This document shows positions 31,311-37,708 of a DNA stretch of 64,000 nucleotides, piece after piece. Where the stretch lies: the IMG/VR virus record IMGVR_UViG_3300020473_000013, positions 160,854-224,853 of that record; one strand, 5' to 3'. The notes beneath the pieces are model-generated. The model did no database searches and was not told where the DNA came from. It saw nothing but the letters and a program-made list of their open reading frames with translations. Position numbers and translations under genes: made by a program. Position 1 is the first letter of the stretch; each line of letters opens with the position of its first letter.

Positions 31311-31826
31311 ATGCTTACCCACATGGTGAGTTTGTCTAGCGTCAGTTGGGAAGTTAGCCCGTACACCGGAACCAAAGGCTGTTACGTGGCAATGCAACCC
31401 GACGATCCCAGCAAGCTGCGTATTATGGACCTGTGCGCACGCCTCGGTGTGGATACCGATCCGCGCAAGCTGCACAGCACCTTGATGTACAGCCCTGAGC
31501 TGGCCCCGGAACCTGATACGTTCACCAGCTATCCTTCACGCGCTACTGCGCAGTGTCGAAAGGTGGAATACTTTCCGGGTCACAACAACGCCGGCTACTT
31601 GGTGGCAACACTGGATAGCGATGATCTCCAGTCCGAGCATCTTCGACTCAAGGAGAACGGCGCGAAGCACACCTACGATCCTTACAAGCCGCACGTCACT
31701 CTAGCCTCCCACTTCGACATGACCGACGAGTTGGACGAGGCCATGCAGGCGATGAACATGGAACTGGGCGCTAACCCTGTCCAGTTCGGCTTCGATTCGT
31801 ACACGGTGAGCGACATCAAGGACTGA
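31311..31826 (+). CDS. acb1: 2H phosphoesterase, anti-CBASS nuclease Acb1 (T4 gp57B)-like
   Basis: GCYVA, LHSTLMYS, LVATLDSDDL..EH, GAKHTYDPYKPHVTL: two HxT motifs with Acb1-type spacing. Confidence 0.8.
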   Translation: MLTHMVSLSSVSWEVSPYTGTKGCYVAMQPDDPSKLRIMDLCARLGVDTDPRKLHSTLMYSPELAPEPDTFTSYPSRATAQCRKVEYFPGHNNAGYLVATLDSDDLQSEHLRLKENGAKHTYDPYKPHVTLASHFDMTDELDEAMQAMNMELGANPVQFGFDSYTVSDIKD

Positions 31827-31995
31827 TTTTTGCAGTCTATAATTTGTTACCATTGCAGCGATTCGAGGCTTGCTCAGAAGACCAACGCCGATTTCTGCAT
31901 TTGGTAATTTTAATGCAACGCACGATAAGTAGCGTGCATTTTTGCCGCGGCCCTAATCAGGGTCGCACCCTCCAACCTTCATGATAGGAACCGCT

Positions 31996-33936
31996 ATGAA
32001 AAAGTCCAACGTTACTCTCCGGGGTATCGTGGTCGCGGGCGATTCTCGGCAAGAAGCTGAGGATAACTACCGCGCTGTGGCTACTGGCGTTTCGGTGAAG
32101 GCGCTCCAGGATAAGGACAACGAGTTTGTCATTCTGAGCAACGCCGATTCCGAGCTGACCCTCATGAACCCGCTTAGCGGCGACATGAACCTGGTCGAAG
32201 CCAGTGACCTGCAGAACGACCACTTCGAGTTTCTAGCGTCCGATAGCGACGAGACGGTGACTACGCACTACACCCTCTGCGCCTCCGGATGTGGTTCGCA
32301 CATCATCGCCGATGATACCGAACTCATGGAACGCTGCCCCGTCTGCGCTTCCACTCTCGAAGACCTCAGCGCTGATGACATCGAGGAAGCCCTCAACGCC
32401 GAAGCCTCCGACGAGGAAGAGGAAGACTTCGATGAAGAAGTCGAGGCCTCCGATGACAGCAATGAAGGCGTCTCCACTCCTCTTCTGGTGGTGGCCGGTT
32501 CGTACAACGATGCTGTCGAAGCGTTCCGCTCCATCGCTAGCGGCGAAGCCGATACCGAAGGCTATGACTGTGGTGGCCTGACCATCGTGGCCGACGCAGA
32601 CTCGGACATCCAGTACAGCCCGTACAACGCCGAAGAAGCTGTGGCGTCCGAAGCTCCGGAAGGCTTCTCCGTCGAGGCTTCCACAAACGGCGATTACGCT
32701 GCTCACTGGTACATGTGTGCCAGCGACGAGTGCGGTGTTCATGTCGTGGCGTCCGATGATGAGCCCGTTTTCTGCCCCGTGTGCGCTTCAGGCCTGATCG
32801 AGCCTGACGAGGAAGATCAGCAGGAAGACGAGGTTACCGCTTCCGCCGAGGACGACGAGGAAGACTACGAGGCCGAACTCGAAGACGTGGCTCTGGCCGG
32901 CGACGACGAGGATGAAGAGGAAGACGAGCCCGACGACGAAGACGATGATGACGAAGACGACGAGGAGGATGACGACGAAGACGAAGACTTCGACGACGAG
33001 AACTCCATGTCTGTCTCCAGCGTCACCGTGGAAGACGACGAGGAAGACTTCAAGGGTGAAGCCTCTGCCGAGCACGAAGAAGCCGCAGCGTCCGCAGCTT
33101 CGGAGCCCGCTCCTCTGGAATCTGTGTCCACCGACCTGCTGGCGCTTGCGTCCGCTCAAGGTGAACTCTCCGTCGACCAGCTCGAAGTGGCGTTTGCCGG
33201 AGACATCGCTGGCGAGAGCACCTGGGTAGCGTTCCATGGTGGTAAGCCTGTGGCCACCGTCACCGCGTCCGGCACCAGTGCTCAATCCGAAGTCTTCAAT
33301 TCCAACGTATTCAGCAATCTGGTTCATGCCTCCGCTTCCGAGCAAGGTGTGAGCGCTGCGCTGGAGGAGCTGGGCTTCAAGCCGATCGAGGCATCCGTCG
33401 AAGTCGATTCCTATGTACAGAATGAAGTCTCCAGCCGAGTCGAGGCCGGTGTTTCTGATGTTCGTAGTAATTTCGAGAAGTCCAGCAGCGATCACGCTGC
33501 TCGCTTCGAGGCCGCCCTGGCGACCGCCGCCACCGGCATCAACAAGGGCTTCTTCGACAACGTGAACAACCCTGTTAAGGGAGCCCTCGTGGCCACCATG
33601 AGTTCTCTCGGTATCCGGAACCCGGAGCGCGTCGTTGCCTCGGCATTCGCCAAGCACAACGAGCAATACCTCCGCAATCTGGTCGCCAAGGCGAACGAGA
33701 TCATGGACTACGACGTGGAAGTGCAGAACCAGCTCACCAAGGCTGTCGCTTCTACTGCCGAAGAGCAAGTCGCTACGGCCAGCGCCGGTGAAGGTGAACA
33801 CCTGCCGATCGGCAAGCCCGTAACCTCCGCGAAACCCTCGGCCCGCCCGCAGGAAGACGCACCCTCGCAGGAAGCCACTGCATCCGCCGGCCCGAACCTG
33901 GACGCTGTTCTGGGTACCCTCGGCCGTCGGCGCTAA
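31996..33936 (+). CDS. Capsid scaffolding/core protein with two zinc-ribbon repeats and acidic tracts
   Basis: HYTLCASGCGSH...CPVCAS and HWYMCASDECGVH...CPVCAS; long D/E runs; lies between protease and capsid genes. Confidence 0.7.
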   Translation: MKKSNVTLRGIVVAGDSRQEAEDNYRAVATGVSVKALQDKDNEFVILSNADSELTLMNPLSGDMNLVEASDLQNDHFEFLASDSDETVTTHYTLCASGCGSHIIADDTELMERCPVCASTLEDLSADDIEEALNAEASDEEEEDFDEEVEASDDSNEGVSTPLLVVAGSYNDAVEAFRSIASGEADTEGYDCGGLTIVADADSDIQYSPYNAEEAVASEAPEGFSVEASTNGDYAAHWYMCASDECGVHVVASDDEPVFCPVCASGLIEPDEEDQQEDEVTASAEDDEEDYEAELEDVALAGDDEDEEEDEPDDEDDDDEDDEEDDDEDEDFDDENSMSVSSVTVEDDEEDFKGEASAEHEEAAASAASEPAPLESVSTDLLALASAQGELSVDQLEVAFAGDIAGESTWVAFHGGKPVATVTASGTSAQSEVFNSNVFSNLVHASASEQGVSAALEELGFKPIEASVEVDSYVQNEVSSRVEAGVSDVRSNFEKSSSDHAARFEAALATAATGINKGFFDNVNNPVKGALVATMSSLGIRNPERVVASAFAKHNEQYLRNLVAKANEIMDYDVEVQNQLTKAVASTAEEQVATASAGEGEHLPIGKPVTSAKPSARPQEDAPSQEATASAGPNLDAVLGTLGRRR

Positions 33937-33958: not shown

Positions 33959-34645
33959 ATGATCAACCAAAAGTACACTCGTCTTTTCAATACTGAGCAC
34001 CGTCCGGTCGAGACCGGCGTGATCATCCCCGATGAAGGCATCGCCCTCGTCTACACCAAGGAAGGCGACAAGACCGTCGTTCGTCCGTCCACCGGCGCCG
34101 CCGGCGAGCACTTTGCGGGCCTGAGCCTGTCGCGCAACGCTCCGCCGCTGTTCATGCCGTACATCGAAGAAGCCTCCGTCGAAGGCGAGTTCCTGGAGCT
34201 GCCGCGCACTCCGATCGCCGGCCAGATTCTGGTGAAGATCGGTGGCACCAAGGTCACCATCAACGCCGGTACCGACGCACCTGCCGATGCTTCCAGCGTC
34301 AGTCTCGATGACAACACCATCCGCTTCCACGCTGATCACGACGGCGAAGACCTGATGGTGCAGATGATGTACGAGCCGACCATCACCGAAGCACGGCAGT
34401 GGAAAGGCGACATGCCGGTCGGCGGTCTGCCCTCTTCCGCTCAGGGTATCATCGGTGTCATCACCAAGGGCGACGCCAGCACTACCTACTTCGACGCCTC
34501 TGCCGACTGGTCTGGCGCAATCAAGGCCAAGCTGGGCCCGGACGGCATCTTCACTACCGTCGGCTCTGGCGCTCAGGCCGAAGGCGTCACCGTGCTGCAA
34601 TCGCCGACCCCGGCGGTTCCGCTCCTCGTCCTCAACATCGACTGA
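33959..34645 (+). CDS. Head structural/decoration protein
   Basis: Immediately upstream of the MCP; strongly biased codons typical of high expression. Confidence 0.65.
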   Translation: MINQKYTRLFNTEHRPVETGVIIPDEGIALVYTKEGDKTVVRPSTGAAGEHFAGLSLSRNAPPLFMPYIEEASVEGEFLELPRTPIAGQILVKIGGTKVTINAGTDAPADASSVSLDDNTIRFHADHDGEDLMVQMMYEPTITEARQWKGDMPVGGLPSSAQGIIGVITKGDASTTYFDASADWSGAIKAKLGPDGIFTTVGSGAQAEGVTVLQSPTPAVPLLVLNID

Positions 34646-34696
34646 TCCCACTCCAGCGAAGATCAGCAGACCATTTTAATCACGGAGAACTGAATC

Positions 34697-35797
34697 ATGA
34701 CTCAACCGTACAAAGGCGCACGTATGGTGCTCGCCAGTGGCGATCCGATCGAAGAACTGCGCTTCGGCAACTCCAACCAGCGCGCGCTCGATCCGAAGAC
34801 CGGCGAGTTCAACGCCAACGACAAGGGCGAACTGGTCAATGCCATCAGCAACCTGATGTCGGCCTACGCCAGCGGTGAAGTTCGCGAACAGCAGCCTGCC
34901 GAGATGTCCAGCGCCGAGATTTCCGAAGCTCGTCGCGAAGTTCTCGCCAGCGCTCTGAACGACGCTACCGGTCAGGAGTGGGCAGCTCTGGGTTCCGGCC
35001 TCGCTCGCCAGATCGACTCTGAGACCAGCCGTCAGGGCTTCCTGCGTCGCATCGCTCAGGGCCAGACCCTGCGCCAGGGTGAAGTGCCGCGTGTTCCGAT
35101 GCCCGCGCACGACAGCATCGCCATCGTCGCCACCAACGCTTCGTCTGTCGGCTACCAGACCATCCGTCAGCGCGTGTTCACTCCGGACGAGTTCGAGATT
35201 CAGGCGAACGTCCGCGTCGAGAACCTGGACATCGAACAGGTGAACGGCGATCTGCTGGAGCACGCCTACAACGACGGCCTGCAGGCTGTGATGGTTCAGG
35301 AAGACCGCCTGTGGAAAGACGCTGCTGACAAGACCGTCGGTGTCGTGAACGATCTGGAGTACATCGCTGGCGAGCTGACTACCCGCAACCTGGGTAATCT
35401 GCGTCAGGCCGTGGCCCGCTGGAACCTGCCGGTCAACACCGCCATCATCAGTAACGACTACTGGGCGGACATCATCGGCAGCCAGGACTTCGCTACCTTC
35501 CTCGATCCGATCACCAAGTACGACTTGGCTCTGAACGGTCAGATCGGTACTCTGGTCGGCATGCAGCTCCTGACTGACGCCTTCCGTCAGCCGAACCAGA
35601 AGGTCCTCGGCAGCGGCGAAATCTACGTCGTCGCCAGCCCGGAGAACCACGCTGCCTACTCCACCCGTGGCGGCATCCGGTCCACTCCGACCTCCGGTGC
35701 CAACGCCGGTAACAGCACGCGCGGCTGGTTCATGACTGAGCCGTTTTCTTTTGTACTCGCCAACAGCCGCTCCGTGGCGAAAGGCAAGCGGGTCTAA
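34697..35797 (+). CDS. Major capsid protein (HK97 fold)
   Basis: 366 aa, extreme codon bias; RQGFLRRI..Q.L.QGEVPR, QEDRLW, GQIGTLVGM; position after protease and scaffold. Confidence 0.85.
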   Translation: MTQPYKGARMVLASGDPIEELRFGNSNQRALDPKTGEFNANDKGELVNAISNLMSAYASGEVREQQPAEMSSAEISEARREVLASALNDATGQEWAALGSGLARQIDSETSRQGFLRRIAQGQTLRQGEVPRVPMPAHDSIAIVATNASSVGYQTIRQRVFTPDEFEIQANVRVENLDIEQVNGDLLEHAYNDGLQAVMVQEDRLWKDAADKTVGVVNDLEYIAGELTTRNLGNLRQAVARWNLPVNTAIISNDYWADIIGSQDFATFLDPITKYDLALNGQIGTLVGMQLLTDAFRQPNQKVLGSGEIYVVASPENHAAYSTRGGIRSTPTSGANAGNSTRGWFMTEPFSFVLANSRSVAKGKRV

Positions 35798-35837
35798 TCT
35801 CCCGACCCGGAGATACCGAGCACGATGTAAAGAGTAC

Positions 35838-35921
35838 AGGGTATCGTGAGGACAAGGCCGGCCAGCCCTGTCGCTTCCCTGAGTGACTAACTCACGGTAC
35901 CCTTCTTATTGTTTCAGGGGA
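35838..35921 (+). ncRNA. Structured leader RNA (three-way junction, copy 1) upstream of the endonuclease
   Basis: P1 35838-35850/35891-35903, GAC, P2, P3 GTCGCT/AGTGAC, TAA; loop CCCTGA is complementary to TCAGGG at the RBS. Confidence 0.6.
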
Positions 35922-35929
35922 CAATCATC

Positions 35930-36943
35930 ATGCGAAGCGATTTTTATGTCTATGCACTTCTCGATCCGAGAAAGCCAGGCAAGTACCGTTACGGTAAACT
36001 CAGGTTCGACTATGAACCGTTCTACGTCGGAAAAGGATGCGGTAAAAGGCACGACGCTCACTTCAAGGTAAATCCTTCGAAGGTCTACAACAAGTGGAAG
36101 GATCGGAAGATACGTCGCATTCAGAAAGAAACAGGAAGCGACCCTATCGTCCGTATTTTGAAACGCGACGTTGTAGAGTCAACTGCCTTCCGCCTCGAAG
36201 CTAAAGCCATAGGGCTGATAGGGCGCAAGGGATCAGGCCCTCTCACCAACCTTACAGACGGCGGTGAAGGAACATCTGGCAGAGTGGCTTCCGCTGCTCA
36301 GCGATTGAAGAATGCGGCTTCATGCCGTAGAGTTCGATTGACCATGCCTAAAGGTAGACAGCAGCTATGGTTCAAGAGAATATCCGAAGCCAGCAAGCGT
36401 AGAACGCTAGAAGAACGGGCAGCACTCAGCAAGCGGTATAGCGACATCCAGCACAACCTGCCGGAAGACGTTGACGCCAAACGCCGTGCAGCTCTATCCA
36501 AGTCGAACAAGCGGTACCGTGAATCTATGACGGAGGAACAACGCGAAGCCGAGTCGAGAACCCTGTCCAGTGCAGTCTCCCGATATTGGGAATCAGCATC
36601 CGACGAGGAACGAAAGTCTCGCAGCGACGCGATCCGCCGTGGGTATGCCTCAAAGGCCAGATCGGAAGTAGAAGCAAAGAACCAGAAGATTGCCAATGCC
36701 ATCAAGCAACAACACAGCTCAGCCTCTCCGTTTGACAAGCGGATGCGTAGCTTCAACGTGATGGCAGGTGTCATGGTTCGTAACAGCGTTAACTCTGGCG
36801 AGATTGATCCTGCCGATGCGGATACGATCAAGGCACGCCTCAAAGTGTCTGCCACCAAGTTCTACTCGAAAGAGCATAATTTGGAGCGTGAACCCAAAGC
36901 CCTTCGGGAAAAGGTTCGCAACGTTATCGCCCAGTATGCGTAG
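35930..36943 (+). mobile_element. Free-standing GIY-YIG (LEM-3-like) homing endonuclease gene
   Basis: FYVYALLDPR...PFYVGKG.GKR..AH, LTNLTDGGEG, then helical NUMOD-like repeats; atypical A-rich codon usage. Confidence 0.85.
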
Positions 36944-36976
36944 CCATAAATATCGCTTCGTGTGTTGATTTTTCCT

Positions 36977-37225
36977 GACCAATAGGAGGAGATAATATGT
37001 GCTTCTAACATTGGCAGGTATCTCCTAAAGATCATTGGTCGTTAGACCGCACCGAGTGCGAGCACCCTGCGAGGACAAAGCACCGTAGCTTTGATGCTGT
37101 CTAGTCACATGGATTCCAGCATCTAACTCGCAGGGCGCTCCCTTTCTCTCGGGTGATCTTGTGTCTTGGTCGTAGCAAGCTGTCACGCCCGGGAGCGACC
37201 TGCGGCCAAGATTGTGCAAAGGGAG
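36977..37225 (+). ncRNA. Multi-domain structured RNA (hairpin, three-way-junction copy 2, crossing helices)
   Basis: At least six complementary pairings within about 250 non-coding nt (see findings). Confidence 0.6.
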
Positions 37226-37234
37226 GATAGTCCT

Positions 37235-37708
37235 GTGAATAAAGCGTGCGACCTTTTCGCACTAGCCATTACTGCCTTCAAGGAAGGTAAGTACGACTCC
37301 GCAGCTAAATTCTTCTCCTCCGCGATGGGGTCTGATGACCTCGACTCGTTCGTGAATGACATCGCCCGCAACGTTCCACGTTCGGCGCTCACGGGCCTTG
37401 TACCTTCTTCTGAAAACACACTGTCGCCGTCTCTGGCTTCTGCTGACTCTGAGGACCTTTCCTACATTGTCGAGCGGATCGAAGCTGGATTCCGGGCCGA
37501 GTGCTCTCTCCTTGATGAGGGTGATGAAGAAGCCGAGGTTCGAGCGTCCGATGAGGACGAGGATGATGACCTTGACGAGGAGGACGACCTCGACGATGAA
37601 GACGACGATGACCTCGATGCTGAGGACACGGAGTTGGATGACGAGGAAGACCACAACTCTGGTAAGATGAAGCTCACGGCGTCGGCTGGTCCTGTGCGAT
37701 TCAAGTAA
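37235..37708 (+). CDS. Acidic hypothetical (head-associated?) protein
   Basis: GGGAGG RBS then GTG 37235; D/E tract; LASA, RAS and TASA motifs. Confidence 0.7.
   Translation: MNKACDLFALAITAFKEGKYDSAAKFFSSAMGSDDLDSFVNDIARNVPRSALTGLVPSSENTLSPSLASADSEDLSYIVERIEAGFRAECSLLDEGDEEAEVRASDEDEDDDLDEEDDLDDEDDDDLDAEDTELDDEEDHNSGKMKLTASAGPVRFK

What the first reader, a model, noticed from the sequence alone, without database searches (positions are those of the whole stretch)
35741..35758. Locally recoded patch at the capsid 3' end: likely self-immunity at the homing-endonuclease target
Seen: every other Phe codon I read in the MCP is TTC, but 35744-35755 reads TTT TCT TTT GTA (F-S-F-V), a cluster of disfavoured synonymous codons about 175 nt upstream of the endonuclease. 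Established: free-standing endonucleases (T4 Seg/Mob) cut a neighbouring conserved gene in rival phages and spare their own allele through sequence polymorphisms. Inference: this marks the recognition site.
Basis: partly seen in the sequence, partly recalled or inferred. Interest (0 to 1): 0.6.

Follow-up and report, generated by a model that had tools for sequence, protein, structure and literature searches.

The report
Endonuclease-linked codon flip in capsid gene
Two of the four flagged codons (TTT TCT) are a silent variant that, in wild marine phage populations, always travels with a mobile endonuclease gene inserted just after the capsid gene. That makes them a good but unproven candidate for self-protection from the enzyme; the other two codons are ordinary background.

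Summary
The capsid gene (MCP, 34697-35797) has 9 TTC and 2 TTT codons. Both TTT, its only GTA and one of three TCT are codons 350-353 (35744-35755). As a codon-usage anomaly this is not beyond chance (permutation P=0.20).

The neighbour is a free-standing GIY-YIG homing endonuclease (35930-36943). It sits on a 1,228-bp cassette (35800-37027) inserted 2 nt after the MCP stop. Tara Oceans contigs of the same phage include endonuclease-less siblings with an empty site. Those siblings read TTC AGT TTT GTA, so only 35746-35748 (TTC versus CAG) is endonuclease-linked. TTT GTA is shared background.

Three endonuclease-carrying recombinants have nested conversion tracts. The shortest leaves only 35746-35799 always linked to the cassette. 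That block holds three differences: 35746-8, 35770 and 35794. Only the Phe350/Ser351 flip recurs in an independent pair (L006+/L005-).

Homing with co-conversion is shown. Immunity conferred by this flip is plausible (about 0.45) but cannot be separated from hitch-hiking in silico. Two carriers elsewhere (L004, L059) have TTC AGT. This is a new member of a known kind (T4 Seg-like).

The parts
34697..35797 (+). Major capsid protein gene (366 aa), intact
   Evidence: It matches phrog_2522 (major head protein) at E=2e-106. It is 68% aa identical to the phage PaBG MCP, and relatives lie in the same gene order.
35744..35755 (+). Flagged patch, codons 350-353: TTT TCT TTT GTA
   Evidence: Codon counts are. 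The permutation test gives P=0.20.
35746..35748 (+). Endonuclease-linked trinucleotide: TTC here (TTT|TCT), CAG in endonuclease-less siblings (TTC|AGT). It is a silent Phe350/Ser351 flip with a Ser codon-family switch.
   Evidence: Laid contigs of runs X3 and X4 show it, as do L069 and L076-L079. Linkage with the cassette is complete in the haplotype table. The same contrast occurs in L006(+)/L005(-).
35750..35755 (+). Second half of the patch (TTT GTA): background, not endonuclease-linked
   Evidence: It is identical in the endonuclease-less siblings L069 and L076-L079.
35503..35799 (+). Left co-conversion zone. Silent markers lie at 35503, 35506, 35551, 35698, 35710, 35719, 35746-8, 35770 and 35794. 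Recombinants break between 34396/35503 (L071), 35551/35698 (L070) and 35719/35746 (L072).
   Evidence: One search gives the haplotype table. One search lists the differences.
35746..35799 (+). Minimal MCP 3' block found in every endonuclease-carrying contig. It has three polymorphic sites: 35746-8, 35770 and 35794.
   Evidence: L072 carries sibling-type markers up to 35719 and window-type markers from 35746.
35800..37027 (+). Mobile cassette of 1,228 nt. The empty site has 8 nt (CGCCCTTC) in its place.
   Evidence: A contig joint 35799->37028 is seen in runs X3 and X4. Empty-site contigs are L069 and L076-L079.
35854..35870 (+). Conserved 17-nt leader motif AAGGCCGGCCAGCCCTG upstream of the endonuclease ORF
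   Evidence: It is present, with small variants, in 8 of 10 cassette leaders although the proteins are only 28-63% identical. It is the only exact copy in the 224,853-bp genome.
35930..36943 (+). Free-standing GIY-YIG homing endonuclease ORF (337 aa)
   Evidence: It matches PF22945 (LEM-3-like GIY-YIG) at E=2.3e-8 over residues 6-111 and phrog_314 (homing endonuclease). Its GC3 is 0.57 against 0.78 in the MCP. There is one copy in the genome.
37028..37234 (+). Native, strongly structured intergenic region after the MCP, displaced downstream by the cassette. It carries right-flank endonuclease-linked markers at 37146 (1-nt indel) and 37163.
   Evidence: The fold z-score is -4.8. The markers appear. 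Linkage is 6 carriers versus 4 empty-site contigs.

Best explanation
The 12-nt patch is a composite.

The 5' half (TTT TCT, specifically bases 35746-35748) is a real endonuclease-associated allele. A 1,228-bp cassette (35800-37027) carrying a free-standing GIY-YIG homing endonuclease sits 2 nt after the MCP stop codon. It is homing in natural marine populations of this PaBG/Lu11-like jumbo phage. The enzyme cuts cassette-less genomes. Repair then copies the cassette plus a variable length of flanking donor DNA (co-conversion).

The flip TTT-TCT versus TTC-AGT is the outermost marker of the 54-nt MCP block (35746-35799) that accompanies the cassette in every carrier seen. It is my leading candidate for the silent change that spares the carrier's own capsid gene. 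Three things single it out: it is the only multi-base difference in the always-linked block; it is the only difference that recurs in an independent carrier/non-carrier pair; and it sits in the invariant P-F-S-F peptide, where a Ser codon-family switch is the largest DNA change possible without changing the protein.

The 3' half (TTT GTA) is ordinary background shared with cassette-less siblings.

Shown: the cassette, the empty site, the nested conversion tracts and the linkage. Inferred: that the flip lies in the recognition or cleavage site and confers immunity.
For: - GIY-YIG domain.
- Cassette present or absent at the same slot across relatives: 10 carriers need 9 gains or losses on the MCP tree.
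- Near-identical cassette-less siblings have an empty site. They show 0 differences over 34600-35361 and 11 silent differences confined to the last 295 nt of the MCP, P=5e-7.
- Nested recombinants L071, L070 and L072 are all carriers. The L072 breakpoint lies in a 26-nt interval (35720-45), too short for an assembly chimera at usual k-mer sizes (inference).
- Window-type TTC at 35746-8 occurs in all 8 carrier contigs, and CAG in all 5 empty-site contigs plus runs X3 and X4.
- L006(+) reads TTT TCC against L005(-) TTC AGC. Four codons differ in both pairs (P=0.018). Of these, codon 366 has inconsistent states, and codon 285 is excluded because carriers L070 and L072 have the sibling state. Only 350 and 351 remain.
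- Ser351 needs at least 11 TCN/AGY switches on the tree, the most of 9 Ser columns.
- L061 and L062, near-identical, differ by the same flip.
- Free-standing phage endonucleases cut at a distance from their gene, with co-conversion of flanks (PMC2988022).
Against: - Physical proximity (50 nt from the junction) alone would give complete linkage in 13 contigs.
- The always-linked block also contains 35770 and 35794. The right flank has linked markers at 37146 and 37163, so the site could lie there.
- Carriers L004 and L059 have TTC AGT. Non-carriers L058 and L062 have TTT TCN, and L007 has TTT AGC TTT GTA. Their endonucleases are only 41-58% identical to this one, so their specificity may differ, but this is an excuse and not a test.
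- In the short (about 275-aa) endonuclease subtype, carrier L050 and siblings L041-43 have identical codons 350-353 and differ at codons 359-366 instead.
- Across the whole tree, TCN versus AGY is not significantly associated with carriage (tally).
- No cleavage data exist.
Confidence: 0.5

Rival explanations
1. Pure hitch-hiking. The TTT-TCT allele is only a neutral donor marker lying between the break and the cassette, or within resection range. It is dragged along by co-conversion. The recognition site and the protecting change are elsewhere: 35756-35799, the right-flank structured region, or tolerance by some other means.
For: Nested conversion tracts show that flanking markers ride with the cassette. 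The window-type alleles at five other linked silent sites are T where siblings have C. The cassette is lower in GC3 (0.57 against 0.78), as expected for DNA imported from a lower-GC donor such as L004-L006 (MCP GC 0.52-0.53 against 0.62). Carriers L004 and L059 have the supposedly sensitive TTC AGT.
Against: This does not explain why the same flip separates carrier and non-carrier in the independent L006/L005 pair, or why near-identical L061 and L062 differ there. It also does not explain why Ser351 is the most switch-prone Ser codon. The MCP is intact in carriers, so if the target is in the conserved MCP 3' end, some silent difference in the linked block must protect it, and only three exist.
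Confidence: 0.35
2. Chance. The four A/T-ending codons are ordinary drift in codon choice, with no relation to the endonuclease.
For: Permutation P=0.20 for an equally disfavoured 4-codon window and 0.40 for a run of four A/T-ending codons. TTT GTA is shared with cassette-less siblings. Lower-GC relatives often use TTT and GTA here.
Against: Bases 35746-8 are perfectly linked to the cassette, and the sibling differences cluster next to it (P=5e-7). This reading holds for codons 352-353 but not for 350-351.
Confidence: 0.08
3. The T-run is an RNA signal. It could be a weak intrinsic terminator or attenuator (hairpin 35726-35743 followed by UUUUCUUUU) that limits read-through from the capsid gene into the endonuclease. 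It could also be a slippery site for a programmed frameshift like the one in phage T7 gene 10.
For: The terminator scan flags exactly this site. The carrier allele has the better U-tract; the sibling reads UUCAGUUUU. The native structured region after the MCP has been displaced behind the cassette.
Against: The scan found 3 sites against 2.9 expected in shuffles. The hairpin has 7 pairs including 2 G-U. The region 35700-35800 folds no better than shuffles (z=+0.75). Termination 50 nt before the stop would give stop-less capsid mRNA. The T-run is not conserved in other carriers, for example L006 TTT TCC TTC and L004 TTC AGT TTT. By eye, I saw no standard slippery heptamer in frame.
Confidence: 0.04

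Closest known systems
[quoted passage not shown]
   Same: Both have a GIY-YIG enzyme encoded in an intergenic slot next to a conserved essential gene. Both show sporadic presence among relatives and spread by break repair with co-conversion of flanking markers (review PMC2988022). The candidate target is in the neighbouring gene.
   Different: There is no detectable sequence relation beyond the catalytic domain: the Pfam match is to the LEM-3-like GIY-YIG model, and no NUMOD or HTH domain was found. Cleavage here is inferred to lie within about 80 nt of the insertion, or on the right flank, not hundreds of bp away. The evidence is population-genomic, not from crosses or assays.
T4 segD (GIY-YIG gene between gene 23, the major capsid protein, and gene 24)
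   Same: It occupies the same genomic niche, directly downstream of the major capsid gene (PMC2988022, Table 1).
   Different: segD is antisense to its neighbours, and the 2010 review lists its activity as not determined. The gene here is co-oriented with the MCP and lies upstream of the MCP's displaced structured region, so it is probably co-transcribed late (inference). It also shows signs of ongoing homing.
HEG islands next to essential phage genes (Barth et al. 2023, PMC10448857)
   Same: Nuclease genes sit at boundaries of genetic exchange, often beside capsid genes. In that study, 31% of T5orf172 endonuclease neighbourhoods held a capsid gene.
   Different: That study treats T5orf172 and IPA-HNH endonucleases in cultured phages. 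Here the family is different, the phage is an uncultured marine jumbo phage, and the exchange boundaries are resolved to tens of bases.

Membership tests
Free-standing GIY-YIG homing endonuclease cassette (T4 Seg-like) | GIY-YIG catalytic domain | tested here: met
   PF22945 matches at E=2.3e-8, 34.6 bits against a cut-off of 27, over residues 6-111. The motifs YVY...PFYVGKG are conserved in all 10 homologues.
Free-standing GIY-YIG homing endonuclease cassette (T4 Seg-like) | Lies outside any intron or intein, in an intergenic slot, with intact neighbouring genes | tested here: met
   The MCP aligns end to end with relatives. No Rfam family, including group I introns, matches 35500-37400 at E<=1. 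The cassette starts 2 nt after the stop codon.
Free-standing GIY-YIG homing endonuclease cassette (T4 Seg-like) | Sporadic presence or absence among otherwise syntenic close relatives, with an empty site | tested here: met
   There are 10 carriers and 30 non-carriers, requiring 9 changes on the tree. Empty-site siblings of the same phage exist.
Free-standing GIY-YIG homing endonuclease cassette (T4 Seg-like) | Co-conversion of flanking markers, falling off with distance | tested here: met
   Carriers L071, L070 and L072 have nested tracts. All 11 MCP differences lie in the last 295 nt.
Free-standing GIY-YIG homing endonuclease cassette (T4 Seg-like) | Site-specific cleavage of the cassette-less allele | not testable with these tools
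   This needs purified enzyme and both alleles.
Free-standing GIY-YIG homing endonuclease cassette (T4 Seg-like) | Separate C-terminal DNA-binding module (NUMOD or HTH type) | tested here: inconclusive
   No Pfam hit for residues 111-337 even at E<=10. By eye, residues 150-260 hold about five repeats of the form (S/T)xEE...S...Y. These resemble NUMOD3, but that is only a lead.
Target-site immunity polymorphism | Differs between carrier and non-carrier alleles | tested here: met
   Met for 35746-8, TTC versus CAG. Not met for 35750-35755, which are identical in both.
Target-site immunity polymorphism | Never separated from the endonuclease gene by recombination | tested here: met
   Eight carrier contigs and five empty-site contigs (plus runs X3 and X4) show no exception. 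The closest breakpoint is at 35720-45. The sample is small.
Target-site immunity polymorphism | Recurs in independent carrier/non-carrier pairs | tested here: inconclusive
   Yes for L006/L005, and for TCN versus AGY in L008/L009. No for L050 against L041-43, where the patch is identical. Reversed for L004 and L059, carriers with AGT.
Target-site immunity polymorphism | Lies inside the recognition or cleavage site and reduces cutting | not testable with these tools
   The L072 recombinant places the break to the right of 35719, if it arose by a single repair event. That is compatible with the patch but not specific to it.
Codon-usage anomaly (local recoding) | A cluster of rare codons beyond what the gene's own codon mix gives by chance | tested here: not met
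   Permutation P=0.20 for the 4-codon score and 0.40 for the A/T-ending run.
Intrinsic terminator | Stable GC-rich hairpin followed by a U-tract, more than expected by chance | tested here: not met
   There are 3 hits against 2.9 in shuffles. The fold z-score is +0.75.

The most novel reading that the evidence does not exclude
The Phe350/Ser351 junction in the invariant P-F-S-F motif of the capsid gene may act as a two-state silent 'immunity switch' (TTT-TCN versus TTC-AGY). It would be kept as a long-lived polymorphism across a whole clade of PaBG/Lu11-like jumbo phages by an arms race with a family of capsid-adjacent GIY-YIG endonucleases, and it has flipped at least 11 times. Different endonuclease variants, such as those of L004 and L059, would ride on, and perhaps attack, opposite states.
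Probability: 0.25. Interest if true: 0.7.

Novelty: new member of a known kind. Interest (0 to 1): 0.5.

Why it matters
Homing of free-standing endonucleases has been worked out mainly in T4 crosses in the laboratory. Here the same process appears to be caught in the wild, in an uncultured marine jumbo phage. The donor, the empty site and three recombinants with nested conversion tracts are all present in Tara Oceans assemblies. Together they narrow the candidate break and immunity region to about 80 nt and three silent differences.

If the Ser codon-family flip is the protecting change, it would show how a protein-invariant capsid motif can still escape a DNA-level parasite. It would also explain a recurrent silent dimorphism in this capsid family.

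In practice, the result gives a short list of constructs for a simple cleavage assay. It also warns that capsid-gene 3' ends in these phages are mosaic, which matters when the MCP is used as a phylogenetic marker.

Tried and rejected
- Nucleotide search of GenBank phages with MCP plus endonuclease found nothing. Protein-level relatives (PaBG, HRDY3, Lu11; 63-68% aa) are too diverged at silent sites to test the idea. Their TTC/TCG/GTC codons only reflect their own codon bias.
- Codon-usage statistics on the window alone are not significant.
- Segment-wise identity of the window MCP to 19 alleles shows no visible mosaic at about 80% identity.
- The tree-wide association of TCN/AGY with carriage is not significant by my tally. 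Per-codon silent-change counts show codons 350, 351, 354 and 360 near the top of their amino-acid classes. Codons 331-360 run about 1.2 times the gene average and 361-366 about 1.4 times, similar to the N-terminus.
- I-TevI-type CNNNG cleavage motif: I saw none in either allele of the patch by eye, and the motif is too permissive to be useful.
- Similarity between the cassette leader and the empty-site target, as in an I-TevI-style operator, is no better than shuffles.
- Terminator or attenuator reading: rejected.
- Frameshift reading: no conserved slippery site across carriers.
- Group I intron or other RNA family: none.
- Solved-structure search with the endonuclease found only a weak GIY-YIG domain match (E=0.13).
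- The Belle et al. 2002 SegF paper (PMC155333) is not held. The statement that Seg enzymes spare their own allele through polymorphisms therefore rests on my own knowledge.
- A five-term paper search for a capsid-gene silent target-site case returned no paper.

Full report
**What is at the coordinates**

The window belongs to a 224,853-bp virus record with direct terminal repeats. The same phage, 100% identical over 7.1 kb, is present in Tara Oceans marine assemblies.

ORF 34697-35797 (+) is the major capsid protein (MCP, 366 aa). It matches phrog_2522 at E=2e-106. It is 63-68% identical to the MCPs of Pseudomonas jumbo phages PaBG, HRDY3 and Lu11, in the same gene order: ATPase-like protein, virion protein, MCP, two to three small genes, tail sheath.

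Codons 350-353 (35744-35755) read TTT TCT TTT GTA. They contain both TTT of the gene (9 TTC elsewhere), its only GTA and one of three TCT.

The cluster is not statistically unusual on its own. Shuffling synonymous codons within the gene gives an equally disfavoured four-codon window in 20% of trials. A run of four A/T-ending codons appears in 40%.

**The neighbour**

ORF 35930-36943 (337 aa) has an N-terminal GIY-YIG nuclease domain (PF22945, E=2.3e-8; phrog_314, homing endonuclease). No intron-like RNA surrounds it. It is the only copy in the genome. Its GC3 is 0.57 against 0.78 in the MCP.

PaBG, HRDY3 and Lu11 lack it. I collected about 45 distinct MCP alleles from IMG/VR, JGI, ENA and Logan contigs. 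Homologues of the endonuclease sit directly after the MCP in 10 of them and are absent in 30. This needs 9 gains or losses on the MCP tree. The proteins are only 28-63% identical and fall into a long (about 335-aa) and a short (about 275-aa) type. This is the sporadic distribution expected of a homing endonuclease gene.

**The decisive natural experiment**

Logan contigs of two runs from another study (X3, X4) were laid on 34600-37400. They are identical to the window over 34600-35361. They join 35799 directly to 37028, with 8 other letters in between. The cassette is therefore 35800-37027 (1,228 nt), inserted 2 nt after the MCP stop and ahead of the strongly structured native intergenic region (37020-37240, z=-4.8).

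Exact-protein look-ups with the MCP and with the next gene (37235-37705) returned 13 further contigs of the same lineage. Five are empty-site siblings (L069, L076-L079). Every empty-site contig reads TTC AGT TTT GTA at the patch.

Two conclusions follow:
- Only 35746-35748 (TTC here, CAG there) distinguishes carriers from non-carriers.
- The second TTT and the GTA are shared background.

The sibling Ser codon is AGT. That is a codon-family switch and is itself a rare codon.

**Co-conversion**

Window and L069 differ at 11 MCP positions, all silent. All lie in the last 295 of 1,101 nt (P about 5e-7). The positions are 35503, 35506, 35551, 35698, 35710, 35719, 35746-8, 35770 and 35794.

Three carriers are recombinants, sibling-type on the left and window-type on the right. 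Their breakpoints are nested:

| Contig | Breakpoint interval |
|---|---|
| L071 | 34396 / 35503 |
| L070 | 35551 / 35698 |
| L072 | 35719 / 35746 |

No reciprocal class was seen: no empty site carries window-type left markers. The L072 interval is only 26 nt. An assembly chimera is therefore unlikely there (inference from usual k-mer sizes). L070 and L071 could be chimeric.

On the right flank, a 1-nt indel at 37146 and the base at 37163 are window-type in all six carriers and alternative in all four empty-site contigs.

This is the pattern expected from break-repair homing with co-conversion, as described for T4 Seg enzymes (PMC2988022). If L072 arose in one repair event, the break lies to the right of 35719.

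**Is the flip the immunity determinant?**

The always-linked MCP block (35746-35799) holds only three polymorphisms: 35746-8, 35770 and 35794.

The independent pair L006 (carrier) and L005 (non-carrier) is 96.1% identical. Its 34 differences include a cluster at codons 350-352 (P=0.033). The direction is the same as in the window pair: TTT TCC in the carrier against TTC AGC in the non-carrier.

Four codons differ in both pairs (P=0.018):
- Codon 366 has inconsistent states.
- Codon 285 is excluded, because carriers L070 and L072 have the sibling state there.
- Only codons 350 and 351 remain.

Three further points favour the flip:
- The near-identical contigs L061/L063 and L062 differ almost only by silent changes in codons 330-337 and 349-351, again CCC TTC AGT against CCT TTT TCG.
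- Ser351 needs at least 11 TCN/AGY switches on the tree, the most of nine Ser columns.
- The peptide P-F-S-F is nearly invariant, so the Phe/Ser junction is where the largest silent DNA change is possible (inference).

Several points count against it:
- Linkage at 50 nt from the junction is expected anyway.
- Carriers L004 and L059 have TTC AGT. Non-carrier L058 has TTT TCA, and L007 has TTT AGC TTT GTA.
- In the short-type lineage, carrier L050 and siblings L041-43 are identical at the patch. They differ in codons 359-366, including an Arg CGT-to-AGA switch.
- The site could also lie on the right flank.

I put the immunity reading at about 0.45, pure hitch-hiking at about 0.35, and the rest on chance or RNA-signal readings.

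**Other readings**

The terminator scan flags a hairpin at 35726-35743 followed by the T-run. However, the scan's 3 hits equal the shuffle expectation of 2.9, and the region folds no better than shuffles (z=+0.75). The T-run is not conserved among carriers. No similarity links the cassette leader to the empty-site target.

**Comparison and novelty**

The closest known systems are the T4 free-standing GIY-YIG enzymes SegF and SegG (homing with co-conversion) and segD, which occupies the same niche between genes 23 and 24 (PMC2988022). More generally, nuclease genes are known to sit at exchange boundaries beside capsid genes (PMC10448857). SegB shows that such enzymes read long, partly degenerate sites (PMC2330249).

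The defining features that can be tested in silico are met. Cleavage and resistance cannot be tested here. This is a new member of a known kind. It comes with unusually clean population evidence and one specific, testable candidate for the protecting change.

Noticed in passing
window 35854-35870: The 17-nt motif AAGGCCGGCCAGCCCTG lies in the leader between the MCP stop and the endonuclease start. It is conserved, with small variants, in 8 of 10 cassettes, including both the long and short endonuclease types. The rest of each leader and the proteins (28-63% identity) have diverged. It is the only exact copy in the 224,853-bp genome. It may be a cassette-borne regulatory or operator element.
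   Followed up: partly
window 37020-37240: The native intergenic region after the MCP, displaced behind the cassette, folds far better than shuffles: -92.7 kcal/mol, z=-4.8. It contains a long hairpin (CCCTGCGAG...CTCGCAGGG) followed by a pyrimidine run. It is probably the capsid operon terminator or a processing structure. This implies the endonuclease is co-transcribed with the MCP.
   Followed up: partly
L061:3954-4017 vs L062 (MCP codons 330-337 and 349-351): Two contigs are 99.4% identical over 5 kb and both lack the GIY-YIG cassette. They differ by 13 silent changes: eight consecutive third positions in codons 330-337, plus CCC TTC AGT against CCT TTT TCG. The 11 lineage-specific codons in between are identical. 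Simple conversion from a diverged donor does not explain the identical core.
   Followed up: partly
L050:4086-4110 vs L041-L043 (MCP codons 359-366): In another lineage, a carrier of the short endonuclease type differs from its near-identical empty-site siblings only in the last eight MCP codons. The changes include an Arg CGT-to-AGA family switch. Non-carrier L041 shares part of the tract. This is a parallel case with a different linked patch.
   Followed up: partly
L026:5189-6574 and L048:4153-5484: The same slot after the MCP is occupied in two distant relatives by an unrelated 443-461-aa ORF. The slot may be a general hotspot for mobile genes. The ORF was not identified.
   Followed up: no
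window 31311-31826: A 171-aa protein matches the anti-CBASS phosphodiesterase Acb1 (PF23474, E=3e-17). It lies just upstream of the head-gene block.
   Followed up: partly
window 31981-33936: A 651-aa protein (phrog_20988, annotated ATPase) has very long Asp/Glu runs and repeated Cys-x2-Cys pairs. Its segment 33075-33430 holds 11 of the 13 non-MCP differences between the window and empty-site sibling L069.
   Followed up: no
window 36260-36700 (endonuclease residues about 150-260): By eye, the C-terminal half contains about five helical repeats of the form (S/T)xEE...S...(Y/W). These are reminiscent of NUMOD3 DNA-binding repeats. No Pfam model matches.
   Followed up: no
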